A stretch of DNA of 64,000 bases from Macrostomum lignano (GCA_002269645.1 NIVC01002227.1:1-64000); one strand, 5' to 3'. Positions 5,163 to 10,058 are shown, numbered from the stretch's first letter. The notes: a model not told the origin generated them from the sequence alone. Program-made: numbers and translations.

Positions 5163-5470
5163 ATGACCAAAATGAGTTACGCAACACCGGAAAATGACGT
5201 CATCGCACCAAACCCAGGAGAGCATGCAAGCACATGGCGTCACTATGCCATGGCCTGCTGGTGCACTGCTGTATTCATCGTGAGCCTGATGTCCAATGGT
5301 CTCTCCGCATACAACATTCTGGCCTCGCCATCGTTGCGCAATCCTTCAATGATGCTGTTGTGCTCAAGCTTCTTCAGTAACTGCATCTGCGTTGTGGTGG
5401 CGGCATCCTTGAACCTGGCCTCGGCTTGGCTGGCTGGACAGTGGGCCTTCCAAATTGGCTGGTGCTACTG
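5163..5470 (+). CDS. Opsin exon 1 (N-term, TM1-TM2)
   Basis: MTKMSY...LRNPSMMLL...GWCYW; donor TG|gtgaga. Confidence 0.85.
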
Positions 5471-8400
5471 GTGAGACATGGAACTGTGGTTGCCATGGTG
5501 TCCAAATTGGTTGCTATGGTGTTCATGGTTAGTTGCTATGGTTTTCACAGTGGTTGCTATGGTGTTAACAGTGGTTGCTATGGTGTTCATATTAGTTTCT
5601 ATGGTGTTGATAGTGGTTGCTATGGTGTTGATAATGGTTGCTATGGTGTTGATAGTGGGTGCTATGGTGTTGATAGTGGTTGCTATGGTGTTTATGACAG
5701 CTGCTATGGTGTTCATACTTCGTAGTAGTTGCTATAGTTTGGTGTTTATAGTGGTCACTATGGTAAGTTCAGGAGGCAGCAGAATGGCGCAGAACTGCCC
5801 AAGCGCTGGTTGTGGGACGATGTTATATGTTAAGTACTCGTACTTTTATTTGCTCAACAGGTACGTTTTTGGCACGAGCTCCCTGGGTCTGTTCAACATC
5901 AATCTGTTGACCGGCCTGTCGCTCCTCCGGTGCCGCATGGTAACAAAAAACAGGCCGTTCAATCACTCGGTCGCCACGGCTCTCATCGCCTTGTGCGCCG
6001 CTCTGGGCGCTGCCTGGAGCCTCCCGCCAATGTTCGGCGTGGCTGGAGTTCGCCGGGTTGGTCACGTGGCCGCCTGCGACTTGAACTGGGCAAGCAGCAG
6101 GCCTCAGGACAAGGCGTACCTGGTTGGTTTGCTTCTGGGACAGTTTCTGTTGCCGTTGGCAGCCATCACCGCCTCCTATGCCGCCATCTATGCGCATGTA
6201 AGACTAAGCATTAGTCAGTTAGTTAGTTAGTTAGTTAGCTAGGTAGTTAGTTAATTAGTTAGTTAGTTGGTTAGTTAGTTAGTTAGTTAGTTAGTTAGTT
6301 AGTTAGTTAGTTAGTTAGTTAGTTAGTTAGTTAGTTAGTTTGTTTGTTTGTTTGTTTGTTTGTTTGTTTGTTAGTTAGCTAGTAGTTAGCTAGTTAGTTA
6401 GTTAGTTAGTTAGTTAGTTAGTTAGTTAGTTAGTTAGTTAGTTAGTTAGTTAGTTAGTTAGTTAGTTAGTCAGTTAGTTAGTTAGTTAGTTAGTTAGTTA
6501 GTTAGTTAGTTAGTTAGTTAGTTAGTTAGTTAGTTTGTTTGTTTGTTTGTTTGTTTGTTAGTTAGTTAGTTAGTTAGTTAGTTAGTTAGTTAGTTTGTTA
6601 GTTAGTTAGTTAGTTAGTTAGTTAGTTAGTTAGTTAGTTAGTTAGTTAGTTTGTTTGTTTGTTTGTTAGTTAGCTAGTAGTTAGCTAGTTAGTTGGTTAG
6701 TTAGTTAGTTAGTTAGTTAGTTAGTTAGTTAGTTAATCAGTTAGTTAGTTTGTTTGTTTGTTTGTTTGTTTGTTTGTTTGTTTGTTTGTTAGCTAGTAGT
6801 TAGCTACTTAGTTAGTTAGTTAGTTAGTTAGTTAGTTAGTCAGTTAGTTAGTTAGTTAGTTTGTTTGTTTAGTTAGTTAGTTAGTTAGTTAGTTAGTTAG
6901 TTAGTTAGTTAGTTAGTTAGTTAGTCAGTCAGTTAGTTAGTTAGTTAGCTAGTTAGTTAGCTAGGTAGTTAGTTAGTTGGTTAGTTAGTTAGTTAGTTAG
7001 TTAGTCAGTTAGTTAGTTAGTTAGTTAGTTAGTTAGTTAGTTAGTTAGTTAGTCAGTTAGTTAGTTAGTTAGTTAGTTAGTTAGTTAGTTAGTTAGTTAG
7101 TTAGTTAGTTAGTTAGTTTGTTTGTTTGTTTGTTTGTTTGTTAGTTAGTTAGTTAGTTAGTTAGTTAGTTAGTTAGTTAGTTAGTTAGTTAGTTAGTTAG
7201 TTAGTTAGTTAGTTAGTTAGTTAGTTAGTTAGTTAGTTAGTTAGTTTAGTTAGTTAGTTAGTTAGTTAGTTAGTTAGTTAGTTAGTTAGTTAGTTAGTTA
7301 GTTAGTTAGTTAGTCAGTTAGTTAGTTAGTTTAGTTAGTTAGTTAGTTAGTTAGTTAGTTAGTTAGTTAGTTTGTTTGTTTGTTAGTTAGTTAGTTAGTT
7401 AGTTAGTTAGTTAGTTAGTTAGTTAGTTAGTTAGTTAGTTAGTTTGTTTGTTAGTTTGTTTGTTTGTTTGTTAGTTAGCTAGTAGTTAGCTAGTTAGTTA
7501 GTTAGTTAGTTAGTTAGTTAGTTAGTTAGTTAGTTAGTTGGTTAGTTGGTTAGTTAGTTAGTTAGTTAGTTAGTTAGTTAGTTAGTTAGTTAGTTAGTTT
7601 GTTTGTTTGTTTGTTTGTTTGTTAGCTAGTAGTTAGCTAGTTAGTTAGTTAGTTAGTTAGTTAGTTAGTCAGTTAGTTAGTTTGTTTGTTTGTTTGTTTA
7701 GTTAGTTAGTTAGTTAGTTAGTTAGTTAGTTAGTTAGTTAGTCAGTCAGTTAGTTAGTTAGTTAGCTAGTTAGTTAGCTAGGTAGTTAGTTAGTTGGATA
7801 GTTAGTTAGTTAGTTAGTTAGTTAGTCAGTTAGTTAGTTAGTTAGTTAGTTAGTTAGTTAGTTAGTCAGTTAGTTAGTTAGTTAGTTAGTTAGTTAGTTA
7901 GTTAGTTAGTCAGTTATTTAGTTAGTCAGTTAGTTAGTTAGTTAGTTAGTTAGTTAGTTAGTTAGTTAGTTAGTTAGTTAGTTTGTTTGTTTGTTTGTTT
8001 GTTTGTTAGCTAGTTAGTTAGTTAGTTAGTTAGTTAGTTAGTTAGTTAGTTAGTTAGTTAGTTAGTTAGTTAGTTAGTTAGTCAGTCAGTTAGTTAGTTA
8101 GTTAGTTAGTTAGTTAGTTAGTTAGTTAGTCAGTCAGTTAGTTAGTTAGTTAGCTAGTTAGTTAGCTAGGTAGTTAGTTAGTTGGATAGTTAGTTAGTTA
8201 GTTAGTTAGTTAGTCAGTTAGTTAGTTAGTTAGTTAGTTAGTTAGTTAGTTAGTCAGTTAGTTAGTTAGTTAGTTAGTTAGTTAGTTAGTTAGTTAGTCA
8301 GTTAGTTAGTTAGTTAGTTAGTTAGTTAGTTAGTTAGTTAGTTAGTTAGTTTGCATGTCTACTTTGCATGTATACTTCATAGGGTCTGCACTGGCTGAGG

Positions 8401-10058
8401 CCGCACGTGCTTTGAGTCACGCGAACTAATTGAATGGTGGAAGACCGGAAAATTAGCCAAATTACGAGCGTATAACTGACTCTGTTTGGAGCGCAGTTTT
8501 TTTAGATTTTTTAGGTTTTTTGGAGCAAAATCTTGAGCAGAACTCTAATATGGCGTGCCTTATTGTACTCTATTAAGACTGAATTCACATTGTGAACGTC
8601 AGATCCGTCGAAGTCGCGTCTCCGGCTTGTTGAGCACCAGCGGGAATGAAGTTAGACGAAATCGCCAGTTCGTCATTCACGTATTGGCTATGATTGGTGA
8701 GTTGCTTTTGCTTGCTATAGATGGGGCGCCAGCTACAGCTACAGAGGGGCGCCAGCTACAGAGGGGTGACAGCTACAGAGGGGGCGCCAGCTACAGAGGG
8801 GTGACAGCTACAGAGGGGCGCCAGCTACAGAGGGGTGACAGCTACAGAGGGGGCGCCAGCTACAGAGGGGTGACAGCTACAGAGGGGCGCCAGCTACAGA
8901 GGGGCGCCAGCTACAGAGGGGTGACAGCTACAGAGGGGTGACAGCTACAGAGGGGGCGCCAGCTACAGAGGGGGCGCCAGCTACAGAGGGGGCGCCAGCT
9001 ACAGAGGGGGCGCCAGCTACAGAGGGGGCGTCAGCTACAGAGGGGGCGCCAGCTACAGAGGGGTGACAGCTACAGAGGGGGCGCCAGCTACAGAGGGGGG
9101 CGCCAGCTACAGAGGGGTGACAGCTACAGAGTTGGCGCCAGCTACAGAGGGGGAGCCAGCTACAGAGGGGTGACAGCTACAGAGTTGGTGCCAGCTACAG
9201 AGGGGGCGCCAGCTACAGAGGGGCGCCAGCTACAGAGTTGGCGCCAGCAACAGAGGGGCGCGCCAGCTACGAGGGGCGCCAGCTACAGAGGGGGCGCCAG
9301 CTACAGAGGGGTGACAGCTACAGAGGGGGCGCCAGCTACAGAGGGGGCGCCAGCAACAGAGGGGCGCGCCAGCTACGAGGGGCGCCAGCTACAGAGGGGG
9401 CGCCAGCTACAGAGGGGTGACAGCTACAGAGGGGGCGCCAGCTACAGAGGGGGCGCCAGCTACAGAGGGGGCGCCAGCAACAGAGGGGCGCGCCAGCTAC
9501 GAGGGGCGCCAGCTACAGAGGGGGCGCCAGCTACAGAGGGGTGACAGCTACAGAGGGGGCGCCAGCTACAGAGGGGGCGCCAGCAACAGAGGGGTGCGCC
9601 AGCTACAGATGCAGAACAGGCAATCTATGCTTATCAGGCAATTCTCGTACAAGCGCAAAGCCATCATTCCCTCAGGCGCATTTGTCATCTGCTGGACTCC
9701 GTACGCAGTTCTGGCTGCTCGCAGTCTGGCCGCTCCGCTGTCAATGGACAGCCTCGCTTACCGCGTGCTGTCAACCGTCGCTCTGCTGCTGGCGAAGACC
9801 GGCATGGCCGCATCGGCCGTCTCCTACTTCGCTGTCAACGCCGAATTCCGGGCCGCTTTCGCGGTTACCCCGCTGGGCAAGCCGATGCTGCACTGCGCGA
9901 GTTCGCTGATCAGGCGGTTTCGCCGGAACACCGGTAGCAGCGCGGCAGCAGCGAGCAGTGGACTGTCCTCAGCCATTCCCCGCTGGACCGGGCCCATCTG
10001 CAAAGAGTTGAAGATGTTGAAGCTGGCACACGCCAGGCTCCAGAACTGCAGATGCTGA
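5163..10058 (+). CDS. Opsin-family GPCR, atypical (possibly RGR/peropsin/retinochrome-like); join(5163..5470,5861..6197,8603..8696,9676..10058), 373 aa
   Basis: Seven hydrophobic segments; SN in TM1, LRNP loop, TM3 Cys (WCYWY), PPMFG...ACDLNW in ECL2, CWTPY in TM6, LLAKT Lys in TM7 then N-x-x-FR. All introns are GT-AG with matching phases (2,0,1); total 1122 nt. Start could also be the ATG at 5172. Confidence 0.88.
5490..5765. repeat. 21-bp minisatellite in opsin intron 1
   Basis: ggttgctatggtgttgatagt units. Confidence 0.92.
5861..6197 (+). CDS. Opsin exon 2 (TM3-TM5)
   Basis: Acceptor caacag|G; YVFGTSSLG...PPMFG...CDLNW...YAAIYAH; donor gtaaga. Confidence 0.88.
6215..8352. repeat. (GTTA)n/(GTTT)n tetranucleotide satellite in opsin intron 2
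   Basis: About 2.1 kb of gtta with gttt, gcta and gtca variants. Confidence 0.98.
8603..8696 (+). CDS. Opsin exon 3 (ICL3, start of TM6)
   Basis: cag|ATC; IRRSRVSGLLSTSGNEVRRNRQFVIHVLAMIG; donor G|gtgagt; phase links exons 2 and 4. Confidence 0.8.
8720..9608. repeat. 17/18-bp GC-rich minisatellite in opsin intron 3
   Basis: gggggcgccagctacaga and ggggtgacagctacaga units. Confidence 0.96.
9676..10058 (+). CDS. Opsin exon 4 (TM6-TM7, C-tail)
   Basis: ccctcag|GC; AFVICWTPY...LLLAKTGMAASAVSYFAVNAEFR...; TGA at 10056-10058. Confidence 0.88.

What the first reader, a model, noticed from the sequence alone, without database searches (positions are those of the whole stretch)
5163..10058. Opsin that keeps the retinal Lys but has lost canonical signalling motifs (photoisomerase-like?)
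By manual alignment to bovine rhodopsin numbering, K296 is present (LLAKT) but NPxxY reads SAVSY, E/DRY reads LRC, D2.50 is N, W4.50 is absent and the NKQ tripeptide reads NAE; CWTPY is intact. Altered NPxxY is known in RGR (NAxxY) and retinochromes, which act as retinal photoisomerases. Inference: this is a chromopsin-like, possibly non-G-protein-coupled opsin.
Basis: partly seen in the sequence, partly recalled or inferred. Interest (0 to 1): 0.72.

Follow-up and report, generated by a model that had tools for sequence, protein, structure and literature searches.

The report
Divergent flatworm xenopsin with degenerate motifs
A four-exon gene from a Macrostomum-like flatworm encodes a fast-evolving light-receptor protein that gene structure places in the xenopsin family; it keeps the retinal-binding lysine but has lost the usual signalling motifs and the usual counterion, so it is probably an unconventional pigment and not a relative of retinochrome or RGR.

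Summary
A GT-AG gene model (exons 5163-5470, 5861-6197, 8603-8696, 9676-10058) gives a 373-aa opsin. It keeps K296, C110/C187, R135, Y223, CWTPY and Y306. It reads N83, LRC for E/DRY, A161, SAVSY for NPxxY and NAE for NKQ. I add that the Glu181 counterion is Val and the residues around the Schiff base are remodelled (V114, V178, D188, L292, G298).

A four-exon copy in Macrostomum lignano (61% identity) keeps every one of these states, with dN/dS about 0.2, so this is a constrained gene and not a pseudogene.

The chromopsin reading fails. RGR, retinochrome and peropsin references score lowest, L292 replaces the chromopsin P292, and E181 is absent.

Introns 2 and 3 match the two xenopsin signature introns exactly in position and phase (after 229, phase 0; codon 259, phase 1). 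None of the three c-opsin introns is present. Sequence-based trees are weak: the point estimate is sister to polyclad xenopsin clade B, with about 27% bootstrap support.

Rawlinson et al. 2019 already suggested that clade B xenopsins may be photoisomerases. That function remains plausible here but untested. Retained R3.50, Y5.58 and Y7.53 and a constrained cytoplasmic face also allow signalling.

The parts
5163..5470 (+). Exon 1: start codon, N-terminus, TM1, TM2 (N83 in FFSNCIC, 5370-5390) and the start of TM3 up to C110-Y-W. It ends in phase 2 inside the codon for W112 (bovine numbering).
   Evidence: There is an in-frame stop upstream of the ATG. The same junction occurs in M. lignano.
5471..5860 (+). 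Intron 1 (GT..AG). It is seen only in these two genes and was absent from all eight other opsin genes examined. Most of it is a 21-bp tandem array (5486-5717).
5861..6197 (+). Exon 2: TM3 (Y113; LRC in place of E/DRY, inside 5922-5939), ICL2, TM4 (C160, A161), ECL2 hairpin (V181 ... C187-D188, 6051-6080) and TM5 up to Y223...H229.
6198..8602 (+). Intron 2, phase 0, after bovine position 229. This is the first xenopsin signature intron. It contains a (TTAG)n array of about 535 copies (6211-8351).
8603..8696 (+). Exon 3: ICL3 and the cytoplasmic half of TM6 (IRRSRVSGLL...HVLAMI + first base of G259).
   Evidence: The junctions agree with the deposited M. lignano model PAA90994.1.
8697..9675 (+). 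Intron 3, phase 1, inside codon 259 (six residues before W265). This is the second xenopsin signature intron. It contains an 18-bp tandem array of about 50 copies (8736-9609).
9676..10058 (+). Exon 4: the rest of TM6 (CWTPY, 9690-9704), TM7 (LLAKT with K296 at 9795-9797; SAVSY, 9813-9827), helix 8 (NAEFR), VTPL (9864-9875), a Cys at the palmitoylation position, an unconstrained tail and the stop codon.
10272..10289 (+). Two AATAAA hexamers about 215-230 nt after the stop codon. They are candidate polyadenylation signals.
   Evidence: sequence only; no transcript evidence

Best explanation
This is an intact, selectively constrained opsin gene of a Macrostomum-like flatworm that descends from the xenopsin lineage. 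It most resembles the flatworm 'clade B' xenopsins, though membership of that clade is unproven.

Shown here:
- It has a 7TM opsin fold with the Schiff-base lysine, the TM3-ECL2 disulfide, the CWxPY toggle, R3.50, Y5.58 and Y7.53.
- It carries both xenopsin signature introns plus one extra intron.
- It lacks D2.50, E/D3.49, Y3.51, N7.49, P7.50, E6.30, Q312 and both usual counterions (Y113, V181).
- Its Schiff-base surroundings are remodelled identically in the window copy and the M. lignano copy (N94, V114, V178, V181, A186, D188, L292, G298).

Inferred:
- It still binds retinal through K296, but with an atypical Schiff-base environment. The base may be unprotonated (UV or short-wavelength absorbing), or stabilised by D188 or an anion.
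- Its coupling to G proteins is weakened or altered.
- It therefore works as an accessory or non-visual pigment. It could be a retinal-handling photoisomerase-type partner of the visual opsins, as suggested for clade B, or a non-canonical light sensor. It is not a standard Gi-coupled xenopsin photopigment.
For: Gene and constraint:
- The model has four exons with GT-AG introns.
- The M. lignano locus L001 has the same four exons and junctions, 61% identity and dN/dS 0.21-0.26. By region, omega is 0.08 for the TM core, 0.19 for the cytoplasmic face, 0.21 for the extracellular face and 0.83 for the C-tail.

Opsin identity:
- Pfam 7tm_1 matches at E 2e-22.
- 137 of 140 nearest hits have K296.
- The AF2 model has pLDDT 85.6 and pTM 0.82, with seven helices, an ECL2 hairpin and helix 8.
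- The 16 best Foldseek PDB hits are all opsins.

Xenopsin descent:
- Introns 2 and 3 lie after bovine 229 (phase 0) and in codon 259 (phase 1).
- They are identical in position and phase to the only two introns of Pecten P0022, Pecten P0007 and Lingula P0011. The clade holding these three contains Terebratalia 'ciliary opsin' and Maritigrella xenopsin.
- Vocking et al. 2017 describe two conserved introns as the xenopsin signature.
- The spacing from P215 and from W265 is gap-free, so alignment error cannot explain the match.
- The c-opsin genes examined (amphioxus P0004, Diadema P0003, Eurytemora P0021) have 120|121 phase 1, 232|233 phase 0 and 312|313 phase 0 instead.
- C160 with a non-Trp 161 matches 91% of xenopsins and is not among the common c-opsin residues at that site.
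- With polyclad clade B included, the NJ point tree nests the gene inside xenopsins as sister to clade B.

Resemblance to clade B:
- L134-R135, loss of W175, E/Q211, loss of P303 and E312 are shared.

Atypical Schiff-base region:
- V114 and V178 occur in 0% of 158 other opsins, V181 in 1%, and D188, L292 and G298 in 2% each. All are identical in both copies.
Against: - Sequence-only placement is weak and partly contradictory. The best single hit is an amphioxus c-opsin at 103 bits.
- Clade HMM scores for the window protein (M. lignano copy 147-170, same order) are c-opsin 163, an unlabelled presumed tetraopsin set 157, other xenopsins 153, xenopsin A 144 and clade B 73, and most clade B sequences are partial.
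- NJ bootstrap for a clade B sister is only about 27%, and both are long branches. Without clade B the gene joins long-branch copepod c-opsins.
- Diagnostic-site tallies are ambiguous: 3 of 17 xenopsin sites and 4 of 12 c-opsin sites match.
- No ML or Bayesian tree could be run.
- No expression, spectral or signalling data exist, so the functional part is inference.
- Retention of R3.50, Y5.58, Y7.53 and a constrained cytoplasmic face is equally compatible with ordinary G-protein signalling.
- Flatworm genomes are reported to hold genuine retinochromes (De Vivo et al. 2023), which reduces the need for another photoisomerase.
Confidence: 0.6

Rival explanations
1. It is a chromopsin-type opsin (RGR, retinochrome or peropsin relative) that acts as a retinal photoisomerase.
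For: - NPxxY is derived (SAxxY), as in RGR (NAxxY) and retinochromes (VPxxY, YPxxY) (PMC9368030).
- N at 2.50 also occurs in retinochromes.
- The tripeptide is not NxQ.
Against: - Chromopsin references score 39-62 bits, and Nautilus and Crassostrea retinochromes and Ciona RGR give no hit. c-opsins and xenopsins score 84-103 bits.
- A chromopsin sister appears in at most 1% of bootstraps.
- The conserved chromopsin P292 is L here. E181, the retinochrome counterion (Terakita 2000, cited), is V.
- The introns are the xenopsin pair. The one peropsin-annotated gene examined (Tubulanus P0006) has different introns.
Confidence: 0.03
2. It is a highly derived c-opsin (encephalopsin, TMT or pteropsin type) retained in macrostomid flatworms.
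For: - The best phmmer hits and the best clade HMM are c-opsins.
- NJ without clade B sequences puts it beside c-opsins.
- Four of 12 c-opsin diagnostic sites match.
Against: - None of the three conserved c-opsin introns is present, while both xenopsin introns are.
- No c-opsin has been found in flatworms, and c-opsins and xenopsins have almost never been found in the same major group (Vocking 2017).
- Its c-opsin neighbours in the tree are themselves long branches.
- C160 with a non-Trp 161 is a xenopsin state.
Confidence: 0.1
3. Despite the altered motifs, it is a conventional light-activated G-protein-coupled photopigment, with compensatory changes elsewhere. This is a rival on function, not on ancestry.
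For: - R3.50, Y5.58, Y7.53, W6.48, P6.50, helix 8 with F313-R314 and a Cys at the palmitoylation site are retained.
- The cytoplasmic face is 68% identical between the two copies, with omega about 0.19.
- Coral ASO-II opsins use a chloride counterion rather than an amino-acid one and still form functional pigments (abstract of PMC12401545).
Against: - Seven independent microswitch or interface positions are changed at once: D2.50N, E3.49L, Y3.51C, E6.30N/D, N7.49S, P7.50A and Q312E.
- Each of these states except N83 (9%) and E312 (11%) is found in 5% or fewer of other opsins.
- No acidic residue occupies any known counterion position (83, 90, 94, 113, 181, 292).
Confidence: 0.25
4. It is a pseudogene, or an artefact of stitching ORFs together in repeat-rich DNA.
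For: - The introns are almost entirely tandem repeats.
- Database gene models for the M. lignano copy are truncated or read through an intron.
Against: - The 373-codon frame is open, and all six splice sites are canonical.
- The exon junctions are identical in a second genome, and junctions 2 and 3 match the deposited model PAA90994.1.
- dN/dS is about 0.2, with omega 0.08 in the TM core and 0.83 in the tail.
- Two introns coincide exactly with xenopsin introns.
- The AF2 model is confident.
Confidence: 0.02

Closest known systems
Macrostomum lignano BOX15_Mlig015728g1 (PAA90994.1; UniRef A0A267GZZ9, A0A1I8H915), annotated only as hypothetical or 'GPCR family 1 domain-containing'
   Same: It is the only close relative among 1.84 billion representative proteins: 68% identity over the deposited fragment and 61% over my full-length reconstruction. 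It has the same four exons and junctions and all the same unusual residues.
   Different: - 39% of residues differ and dS is above 1.
- No shared neighbouring genes were found within 10 kb, so it is either the orthologue in another species or an old paralogue.
- The deposited models lack exon 1 and part of exon 2.
Flatworm xenopsin clade B (Prostheceraeus vittatus xenopsin B1/B2, Stylochus, Echinoplana, Prosthiostomum; Vocking 2017, Rawlinson 2019)
   Same: - K296 and (S/C)W(T/S)PY are kept, while NxQ and the C-terminal VxPx are lost.
- P303 is lost (DSxxY there, SAxxY here) and position 312 is E.
- L134-R135 is present (LRH in B2, LRC here).
- W175 is lost and position 211 is E or Q.
- The NJ point estimate makes them sister groups.
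- The literature has already speculated that clade B members are photoisomerases.
   Different: - Pairwise similarity is low (73 bits or less) and bootstrap support is about 27%.
- Clade B keeps an acidic residue at 181 (D or E) and W301, and B2 keeps D83. This gene has V181, A301 and N83.
- No genomic data are available for clade B, so its introns could not be compared.
Canonical (clade A) xenopsins, e.g. Maritigrella crozieri xenopsin (a Gi-coupled photopigment), Pecten and Lingula xenopsins
   Same: - Both introns are identical in position and phase.
- C160 with no W161, Y113 and CW/SWxPY are shared.
- The taxon fits: a protostome, and a flatworm.
   Different: Clade A keeps DRY, N/DPxxY, E181, NxQ and, with few exceptions, D83, and has no intron in TM3. 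This gene has lost all of these and gained intron 1.
RGR-opsins and retinochromes (chromopsins)
   Same: The similarity is functional analogy only. Both keep the Lys and have a derived NPxxY. N at 2.50 occurs in retinochromes. Both are hypothesised to be non-signalling retinal handlers.
   Different: They belong to a different opsin lineage (tetraopsins). They have P292 and the E181 counterion. Sequence similarity is very low, and the one peropsin-annotated gene checked has different introns.
Anthozoan ASO-II opsins that use a chloride counterion (PMC12401545)
   Same: They are a precedent for opsins in which the counterion is not the usual glutamate, and which remain functional pigments.
   Different: They are unrelated cnidarian opsins. 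From my own recollection, not checked here, their arrangement also involves E292; position 292 here is Leu. Whether this protein uses an anion or D188 is unknown.

Membership tests
Animal (type II) opsins | Rhodopsin-family 7TM fold | tested here: met
   Pfam 7tm_1 matches at E 2e-22. The AF2 model has pLDDT 85.6 and pTM 0.82, with seven helices, an ECL2 hairpin and helix 8. The top 16 Foldseek PDB hits are opsins.
Animal (type II) opsins | Lys at position 296 (7.43) in TM7 | tested here: met
   K287 aligns with K296 in the phmmer alignment to human LW opsin and in the MAFFT alignment. 137 of 140 nearest hits have K there. It is conserved in M. lignano.
Animal (type II) opsins | Acidic counterion at 113 or 181 | tested here: not met
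   The residues are Y113 and V181 in both copies, whereas E or D at 181 occurs in 93% of other opsins. This feature is usual for opsins but does not define the family.
Animal (type II) opsins | Covalent retinal binding and light sensitivity | not testable with these tools
   This needs heterologous expression and spectroscopy.
Xenopsins | Two conserved introns with conserved phase (Vocking et al. 2017) | tested here: met
   The window gene has an intron after bovine 229 (phase 0) and one in codon 259 (phase 1). These are identical to Pecten P0022, Pecten P0007 and Lingula P0011. They were absent from the three c-opsin genes and the one peropsin-annotated gene examined.
Xenopsins | Phylogenetic placement inside the xenopsin clade | tested here: inconclusive
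   The NJ point tree nests it in xenopsins as sister to clade B. A xenopsin sister appears in about 50-53% of replicates. A sister made only of clade B appears in about 27%. HMM scores slightly favour c-opsins. No ML tool was available.
Xenopsins | C160 and no Trp at 4.50 | tested here: met
   C160 occurs in 91% of the 35 xenopsins and is not among the two commonest residues (I, V) in the 27 c-opsins. WIN and MLIG have C160-A161.
Xenopsin clade A (photopigment type) | NxQ tripeptide, DRY, (N/D)PxxY and E181 | tested here: not met
   The protein reads NAE, LRC, SAVSY and V181.
Flatworm xenopsin clade B | K296 kept, with NxQ and C-terminal VxPx lost (Rawlinson 2019) | tested here: met
   The protein has K296, NAE and an unconserved C-terminal tail without a terminal VxPx. 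A conserved VTPL follows helix 8, and its meaning is unknown.
Flatworm xenopsin clade B | Monophyly with the polyclad clade B sequences | tested here: inconclusive
   It is sister to clade B in the point estimate, with about 27% bootstrap support. The shared states are L134, non-Trp 175, E/Q211, non-Pro 303 and E312. Long-branch attraction cannot be excluded.
Chromopsins (RGR, retinochrome, peropsin) | Phylogenetic affinity to tetraopsins/chromopsins | tested here: not met
   phmmer scores are 39-62 bits or no hit, against 84-103 bits for c-opsins and xenopsins. A chromopsin sister appears in at most 1% of bootstraps.
Chromopsins (RGR, retinochrome, peropsin) | Conserved P292 (Guhmann 2022) and E181 counterion (retinochrome) | tested here: not met
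   The residues are L292 and V181.
Chromopsins (RGR, retinochrome, peropsin) | All-trans retinal binding in the dark and light-driven production of 11-cis | not testable with these tools
   This needs a biochemical assay.
c-opsins | Three conserved introns (120|121 phase 1, 232|233 phase 0, 312|313 phase 0) | tested here: not met
   All three are present in amphioxus P0004, Diadema P0003 and Eurytemora P0021, and none is present in the window gene.

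The most novel reading that the evidence does not exclude
This is a xenopsin-lineage pigment that has given up both classical glutamate counterions and rebuilt the Schiff-base pocket. D188 on the ECL2 hairpin is the only conserved acidic residue nearby; otherwise an anion, or no counterion at all, serves. That would be a further independent counterion solution among animal opsins. It may be coupled to a retinochrome-like photoisomerase role that evolved convergently outside the chromopsins.
Probability: 0.2. Interest if true: 0.7.

Novelty: new variant of a known kind. 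Interest (0 to 1): 0.42.

Why it matters
- Genome surveys report only r-opsins and retinochromes in flatworm genomes (De Vivo 2023). Xenopsins in flatworms are known from polyclad and triclad (Schmidtea, Dendrocoelum) sequences. This gene and its mis-annotated M. lignano counterpart would extend the xenopsin lineage to Macrostomorpha, an early-branching group of rhabditophoran flatworms (my own knowledge). It would also give genomic evidence that bears on the enigmatic 'clade B'-type xenopsins.
- It is an extreme natural experiment. Lys296 and the TM6/TM7 core are kept under purifying selection, while DRY, NPxxY, D2.50, NxQ and both counterions are gone.
- Macrostomum lignano is a tractable model (my own knowledge: RNAi, transgenesis). 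That makes testable both the long-standing suggestion that some non-chromopsin opsins act as photoisomerases and the question of how a Schiff base is stabilised without Glu113 or Glu181.

Tried and rejected
- The word-indexed protein search failed twice for the opsin. With the full protein and with a two-sequence profile it returned nothing, not even the M. lignano relative. The exhaustive phmmer search was needed instead.
- A third search with a UBR4 fragment, meant to identify the species, returned only distant hits, so the species remains unknown.
- I looked for synteny between the window and the M. lignano locus. Nothing beyond the opsin exons matched within 10 kb.
- Placement by sequence alone was not decisive. 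I tried pairwise phmmer, clade HMMs, diagnostic sites and NJ with bootstrap. The first NJ grouping, with copepod and anthozoan opsins, was rejected as long-branch attraction. Eurytemora carries the c-opsin introns, and the grouping dissolves when clade B sequences are added.
- P0092, a frequent bootstrap sister, is only a xenopsin-like first exon on a metagenome contig, followed by a transposase. It was not informative.
- The pseudogene or artefact reading was rejected.
- Chromopsin membership was rejected.
- No coordinates are returned for the AF2 model, so the distance from D188 to K296 could not be measured.

Full report
THE GENE

The + strand between 5163 and 10058 carries four open segments joined by canonical GT..AG introns: exons 5163-5470, 5861-6197, 8603-8696 and 9676-10058. 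The spliced CDS is 1122 nt and encodes 373 aa. The first ATG follows an in-frame stop. Two AATAAA hexamers lie about 215-230 nt after the stop codon. The three introns and the 5' flank consist mostly of tandem arrays: a 21-mer, (TTAG) x 535, an 18-mer and a 12-mer. This explains why the exons look like islands in repeat DNA.

CHECK OF THE OBSERVATION

Pfam 7tm_1 matches at E 2e-22. phmmer against PDB sequences aligns the protein end to end with cone opsins and rhodopsin, and places the K of LLAKT on the Schiff-base lysine.

- N83
- L134-R135-C136
- A161
- C264-W-T-P-Y268
- K296
- S302-A303-V-S-Y306
- N310-A-E312

- Position 113 is Tyr, which is normal for non-vertebrate opsins. Position 181, Glu or Asp in 93% of the other opsins, is Val.
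- Several residues around the Schiff base are almost unique and are identical in the window and M. lignano copies: V114 and V178 (0% of others), N94 and V181 (1%), and D188, L292 and G298 (2%).
- The microswitch residues R135, Y223 and Y306, the C110-C187 disulfide, P171, P215, P267, F313-R314 and a Cys at the palmitoylation position are all kept.
- Lack of Trp161 is not a loss peculiar to this gene. Xenopsins typically have C160 followed by a non-Trp residue, as here.

IS IT A REAL, CONSTRAINED GENE?

An exhaustive phmmer search of 1.84 billion representative proteins gave 839 hits. Only one was close: a fragmentary Macrostomum lignano protein (68% identity), annotated as hypothetical or 'GPCR family 1 domain-containing'. 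Every other hit was 41% identical or less, and those covering most of the protein were about 30% or less.

The M. lignano scaffold (L001) contains all four exons with the same junctions. The reconstructed 376-aa protein is 61% identical to the window protein. dN/dS is 0.21-0.26, although dS is near saturation. By region, omega is 0.08 for the membrane core, 0.19 for the cytoplasmic face, 0.21 for the extracellular face and 0.83 for the C-terminal tail.

All unusual motif states are shared between the two copies. The gene is therefore functional, and its odd features are maintained by selection.

No neighbouring genes are shared within 10 kb. I could not establish the window's species. The two copies are either orthologues in two Macrostomum-like species or old paralogues.

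The AlphaFold2 model, built with a 76-sequence alignment, is confident (pLDDT 85.6, pTM 0.82). It shows seven helices, an ECL2 hairpin and helix 8. Its 16 best PDB matches are all opsins.

WHICH OPSIN?

Of the 140 nearest hits covering position 296, 137 have Lys there, so this is an opsin. Sequence similarity does not resolve the subfamily:
- The top hits mix amphioxus and echinoderm c-opsins with mollusc, brachiopod and flatworm xenopsins, all at 77-103 bits.
- Clade HMMs for the window protein (the M. lignano copy scores 147-170 in the same order) give c-opsin 163, an unlabelled presumed tetraopsin set 157, other xenopsins 153, xenopsin A 144 and r-opsin 108.
- Diagnostic sites are split.
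- NJ without flatworm clade B sequences attaches this very long branch to other long branches, namely copepod c-opsins and anthozoan opsins.

Gene structure is decisive. Vocking et al. 2017 (PMC5648526) showed that xenopsins share two conserved introns that differ from the three conserved c-opsin introns. I mapped introns on genomic loci fetched here.

| Gene | Introns (bovine numbering) |
|---|---|
| Pecten P0022, Pecten P0007, Lingula P0011 (xenopsins) | exactly two: after 229 (phase 0) and in codon 259 (phase 1) |
| Amphioxus P0004, Diadema P0003, Eurytemora P0021 (c-opsins) | 120\|121 (phase 1), 232\|233 (phase 0), 312\|313 (phase 0) |
| Tubulanus P0006 ('peropsin') | 100\|101, 144\|145, 184\|185, 252\|253 |
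| Window gene, introns 2 and 3 | after 229 (phase 0) and in codon 259 (phase 1) |

- The xenopsin clade containing these three genes also contains Terebratalia 'ciliary opsin' and Maritigrella xenopsin.
- In the window gene the distances are 14 residues after P215 and 6 residues before W265, without gaps.
- None of the c-opsin introns is present.
- Intron 1 (codon 112, phase 2) is extra and is shared with M. lignano.
- As a rough estimate of my own, with about 900 possible position-and-phase sites, two exact coincidences by chance are of the order of 1e-5.

I then added labelled sequences from the source data of Rawlinson et al. 2019. In that analysis the NJ point tree nests the gene within xenopsins as sister to the polyclad 'clade B' xenopsins. 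Support is weak. The sister group is some xenopsin in about 50-53% of bootstrap replicates, clade B only in about 27%, and a chromopsin in at most 1%.

Clade B and this gene share L134-R135, loss of W175, E/Q211, loss of P303 and E312. Both are long branches, so I treat the clade B link as likely but unproven.

THE CHROMOPSIN IDEA

RGR, retinochrome and peropsin references are the least similar of all opsin groups tested, at 39-62 bits. Nautilus and Crassostrea retinochromes and Ciona RGR give no hit at all. The chromopsin hallmark P292 is Leu and the retinochrome counterion E181 is Val. The introns are the xenopsin pair. Membership in the chromopsins is therefore rejected. What remains is a functional analogy: Lys kept, NPxxY derived, and N at 2.50 as in retinochromes.

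HOW IT PROBABLY WORKS

Shown: the protein keeps the retinal attachment site and the aromatic TM6 cage (F261, W265, Y268, A269, A295, K296) under strong constraint.

Shown: it has lost D2.50, E3.49, Y3.51, E6.30, N7.49, P7.50 and Q312. These residues normally stabilise the inactive state or contact the G protein. It also has no acidic residue at any known counterion position.

Inferred: retinal is still bound, but the Schiff base is either unprotonated (UV or short-wavelength absorbing) or stabilised in a new way. D188, next to the disulfide Cys on the ECL2 hairpin, is the only conserved acidic residue nearby. An anion is another possibility, as in coral ASO-II opsins, which use a chloride counterion (abstract of PMC12401545).

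Inferred: conventional G-protein activation is weakened or changed.

Rawlinson et al. 2019 already proposed that clade B xenopsins 'might be photoisomerases' supporting clade A pigments. This gene fits that idea at least as well as clade B does.

Three things argue for caution:
- R3.50, Y5.58 and Y7.53 are retained, and the cytoplasmic face is conserved.
- Guhmann et al. 2022 argue that a derived NPxxY does not prove absence of signalling, and that even RGR and retinochrome are not firmly established as photoisomerases in vivo.
- Flatworm genomes are reported to contain genuine retinochromes (De Vivo 2023).

My estimates are as follows:
- About 0.7 that the gene is of xenopsin descent.
- About 0.5 that it belongs with clade B.
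- About 0.6 for the overall statement that it is an unconventional, accessory or non-visual retinal pigment rather than a standard signalling photopigment.
- Within that, perhaps 0.25-0.3 for a true photoisomerase role.

NOVELTY

The kind is known: flatworm xenopsin paralogues with Lys296 but without NxQ and VxPx, suspected of being photoisomerases. What appears new:
- A genomic member from a Macrostomum-like flatworm. Vocking et al. screened the M. lignano genome but report flatworm xenopsins only from polyclads and Schmidtea. The genome survey of De Vivo et al. found none in flatworms. The M. lignano copy is truncated and unnamed in databases.
- Intron evidence that ties such a degenerate opsin to xenopsins.
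- The simultaneous absence of E113 and E181, with a conserved, remodelled Schiff-base pocket.

I rate it a new variant of a known kind, of moderate interest.

LIMITS

- No ML or Bayesian phylogeny could be run.
- There are no transcript or expression data.
- No structure coordinates were available for measuring distances.
- Clade labels for some database hits rest on NCBI automatic names, on my NJ clusters, or both.
- The list of retinal-pocket positions comes from my own knowledge of the bovine rhodopsin structures.

Noticed in passing
window 10731-11288 (-): A 185-aa ORF lies tail-to-tail with the opsin gene, about 670 bp from its stop. It has a hydrophobic N-terminus, a B-chain-like 'VCGRRLYYLWEGAC' and a C-terminal A-chain-like 'GCDCCVSSCSVQQLWNYC', which is the cysteine pattern of an insulin-like peptide. 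Pfam gives no hit.
   Followed up: partly
window ~17126-17540 (-): An exon encodes part of an RNA 3'-terminal phosphate cyclase (PF01137, E 3e-28). The mechanical ORF runs on into a tandem repeat that translates as SVCL repeats.
   Followed up: partly
window ~22600-63730 (-): A very large multi-exon gene for a UBR4/p600-type E3 ubiquitin ligase fills more than half the window. PF13764 matches at E 5e-59 near 22.6-23.4 kb, and the zf-UBR box lies at 56.2-57.2 kb. Many of its introns are tandem arrays.
   Followed up: partly
window 4731-5132, 5486-5717, 6211-8351, 8736-9609, 11581-12150 and many others: There is an extreme density of short-period tandem repeats (periods of 4, 11, 12, 18 and 21 bp, up to 535 copies) in introns and intergenic DNA. 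Many of them create long spurious ORFs in several frames.
   Followed up: no
window 1-2600: A strongly strand-asymmetric satellite (GC skew -0.99, AT skew -0.98) translates on the minus strand as (GEERR)n-like repeats.
   Followed up: no
L009 10001-10822 (ENA metagenome contig ERZ26273219): P0092 is a xenopsin-like first exon with 'LNCLC' in TM2 and 'LRY' for DRY, reminiscent of the window gene. Its opsin-like sequence stops exactly at the 229|230 intron position. A Tc1/mariner transposase follows, and no downstream exons occur within 10 kb. It may be a disrupted gene of an unknown invertebrate.
   Followed up: partly
window 9864-9875 (VTPL): A VxPx-like tetrapeptide directly after helix 8 is conserved in both the window and M. 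lignano proteins, while the rest of the tail is unconstrained. Whether it acts as a ciliary-targeting signal is unknown.
   Followed up: no
tool behaviour: The word-indexed homologue search returned no hit even for the 68%-identical M. lignano protein, which is in its collection. Negative results from that tool for this kind of eukaryotic query should not be trusted.
   Followed up: yes
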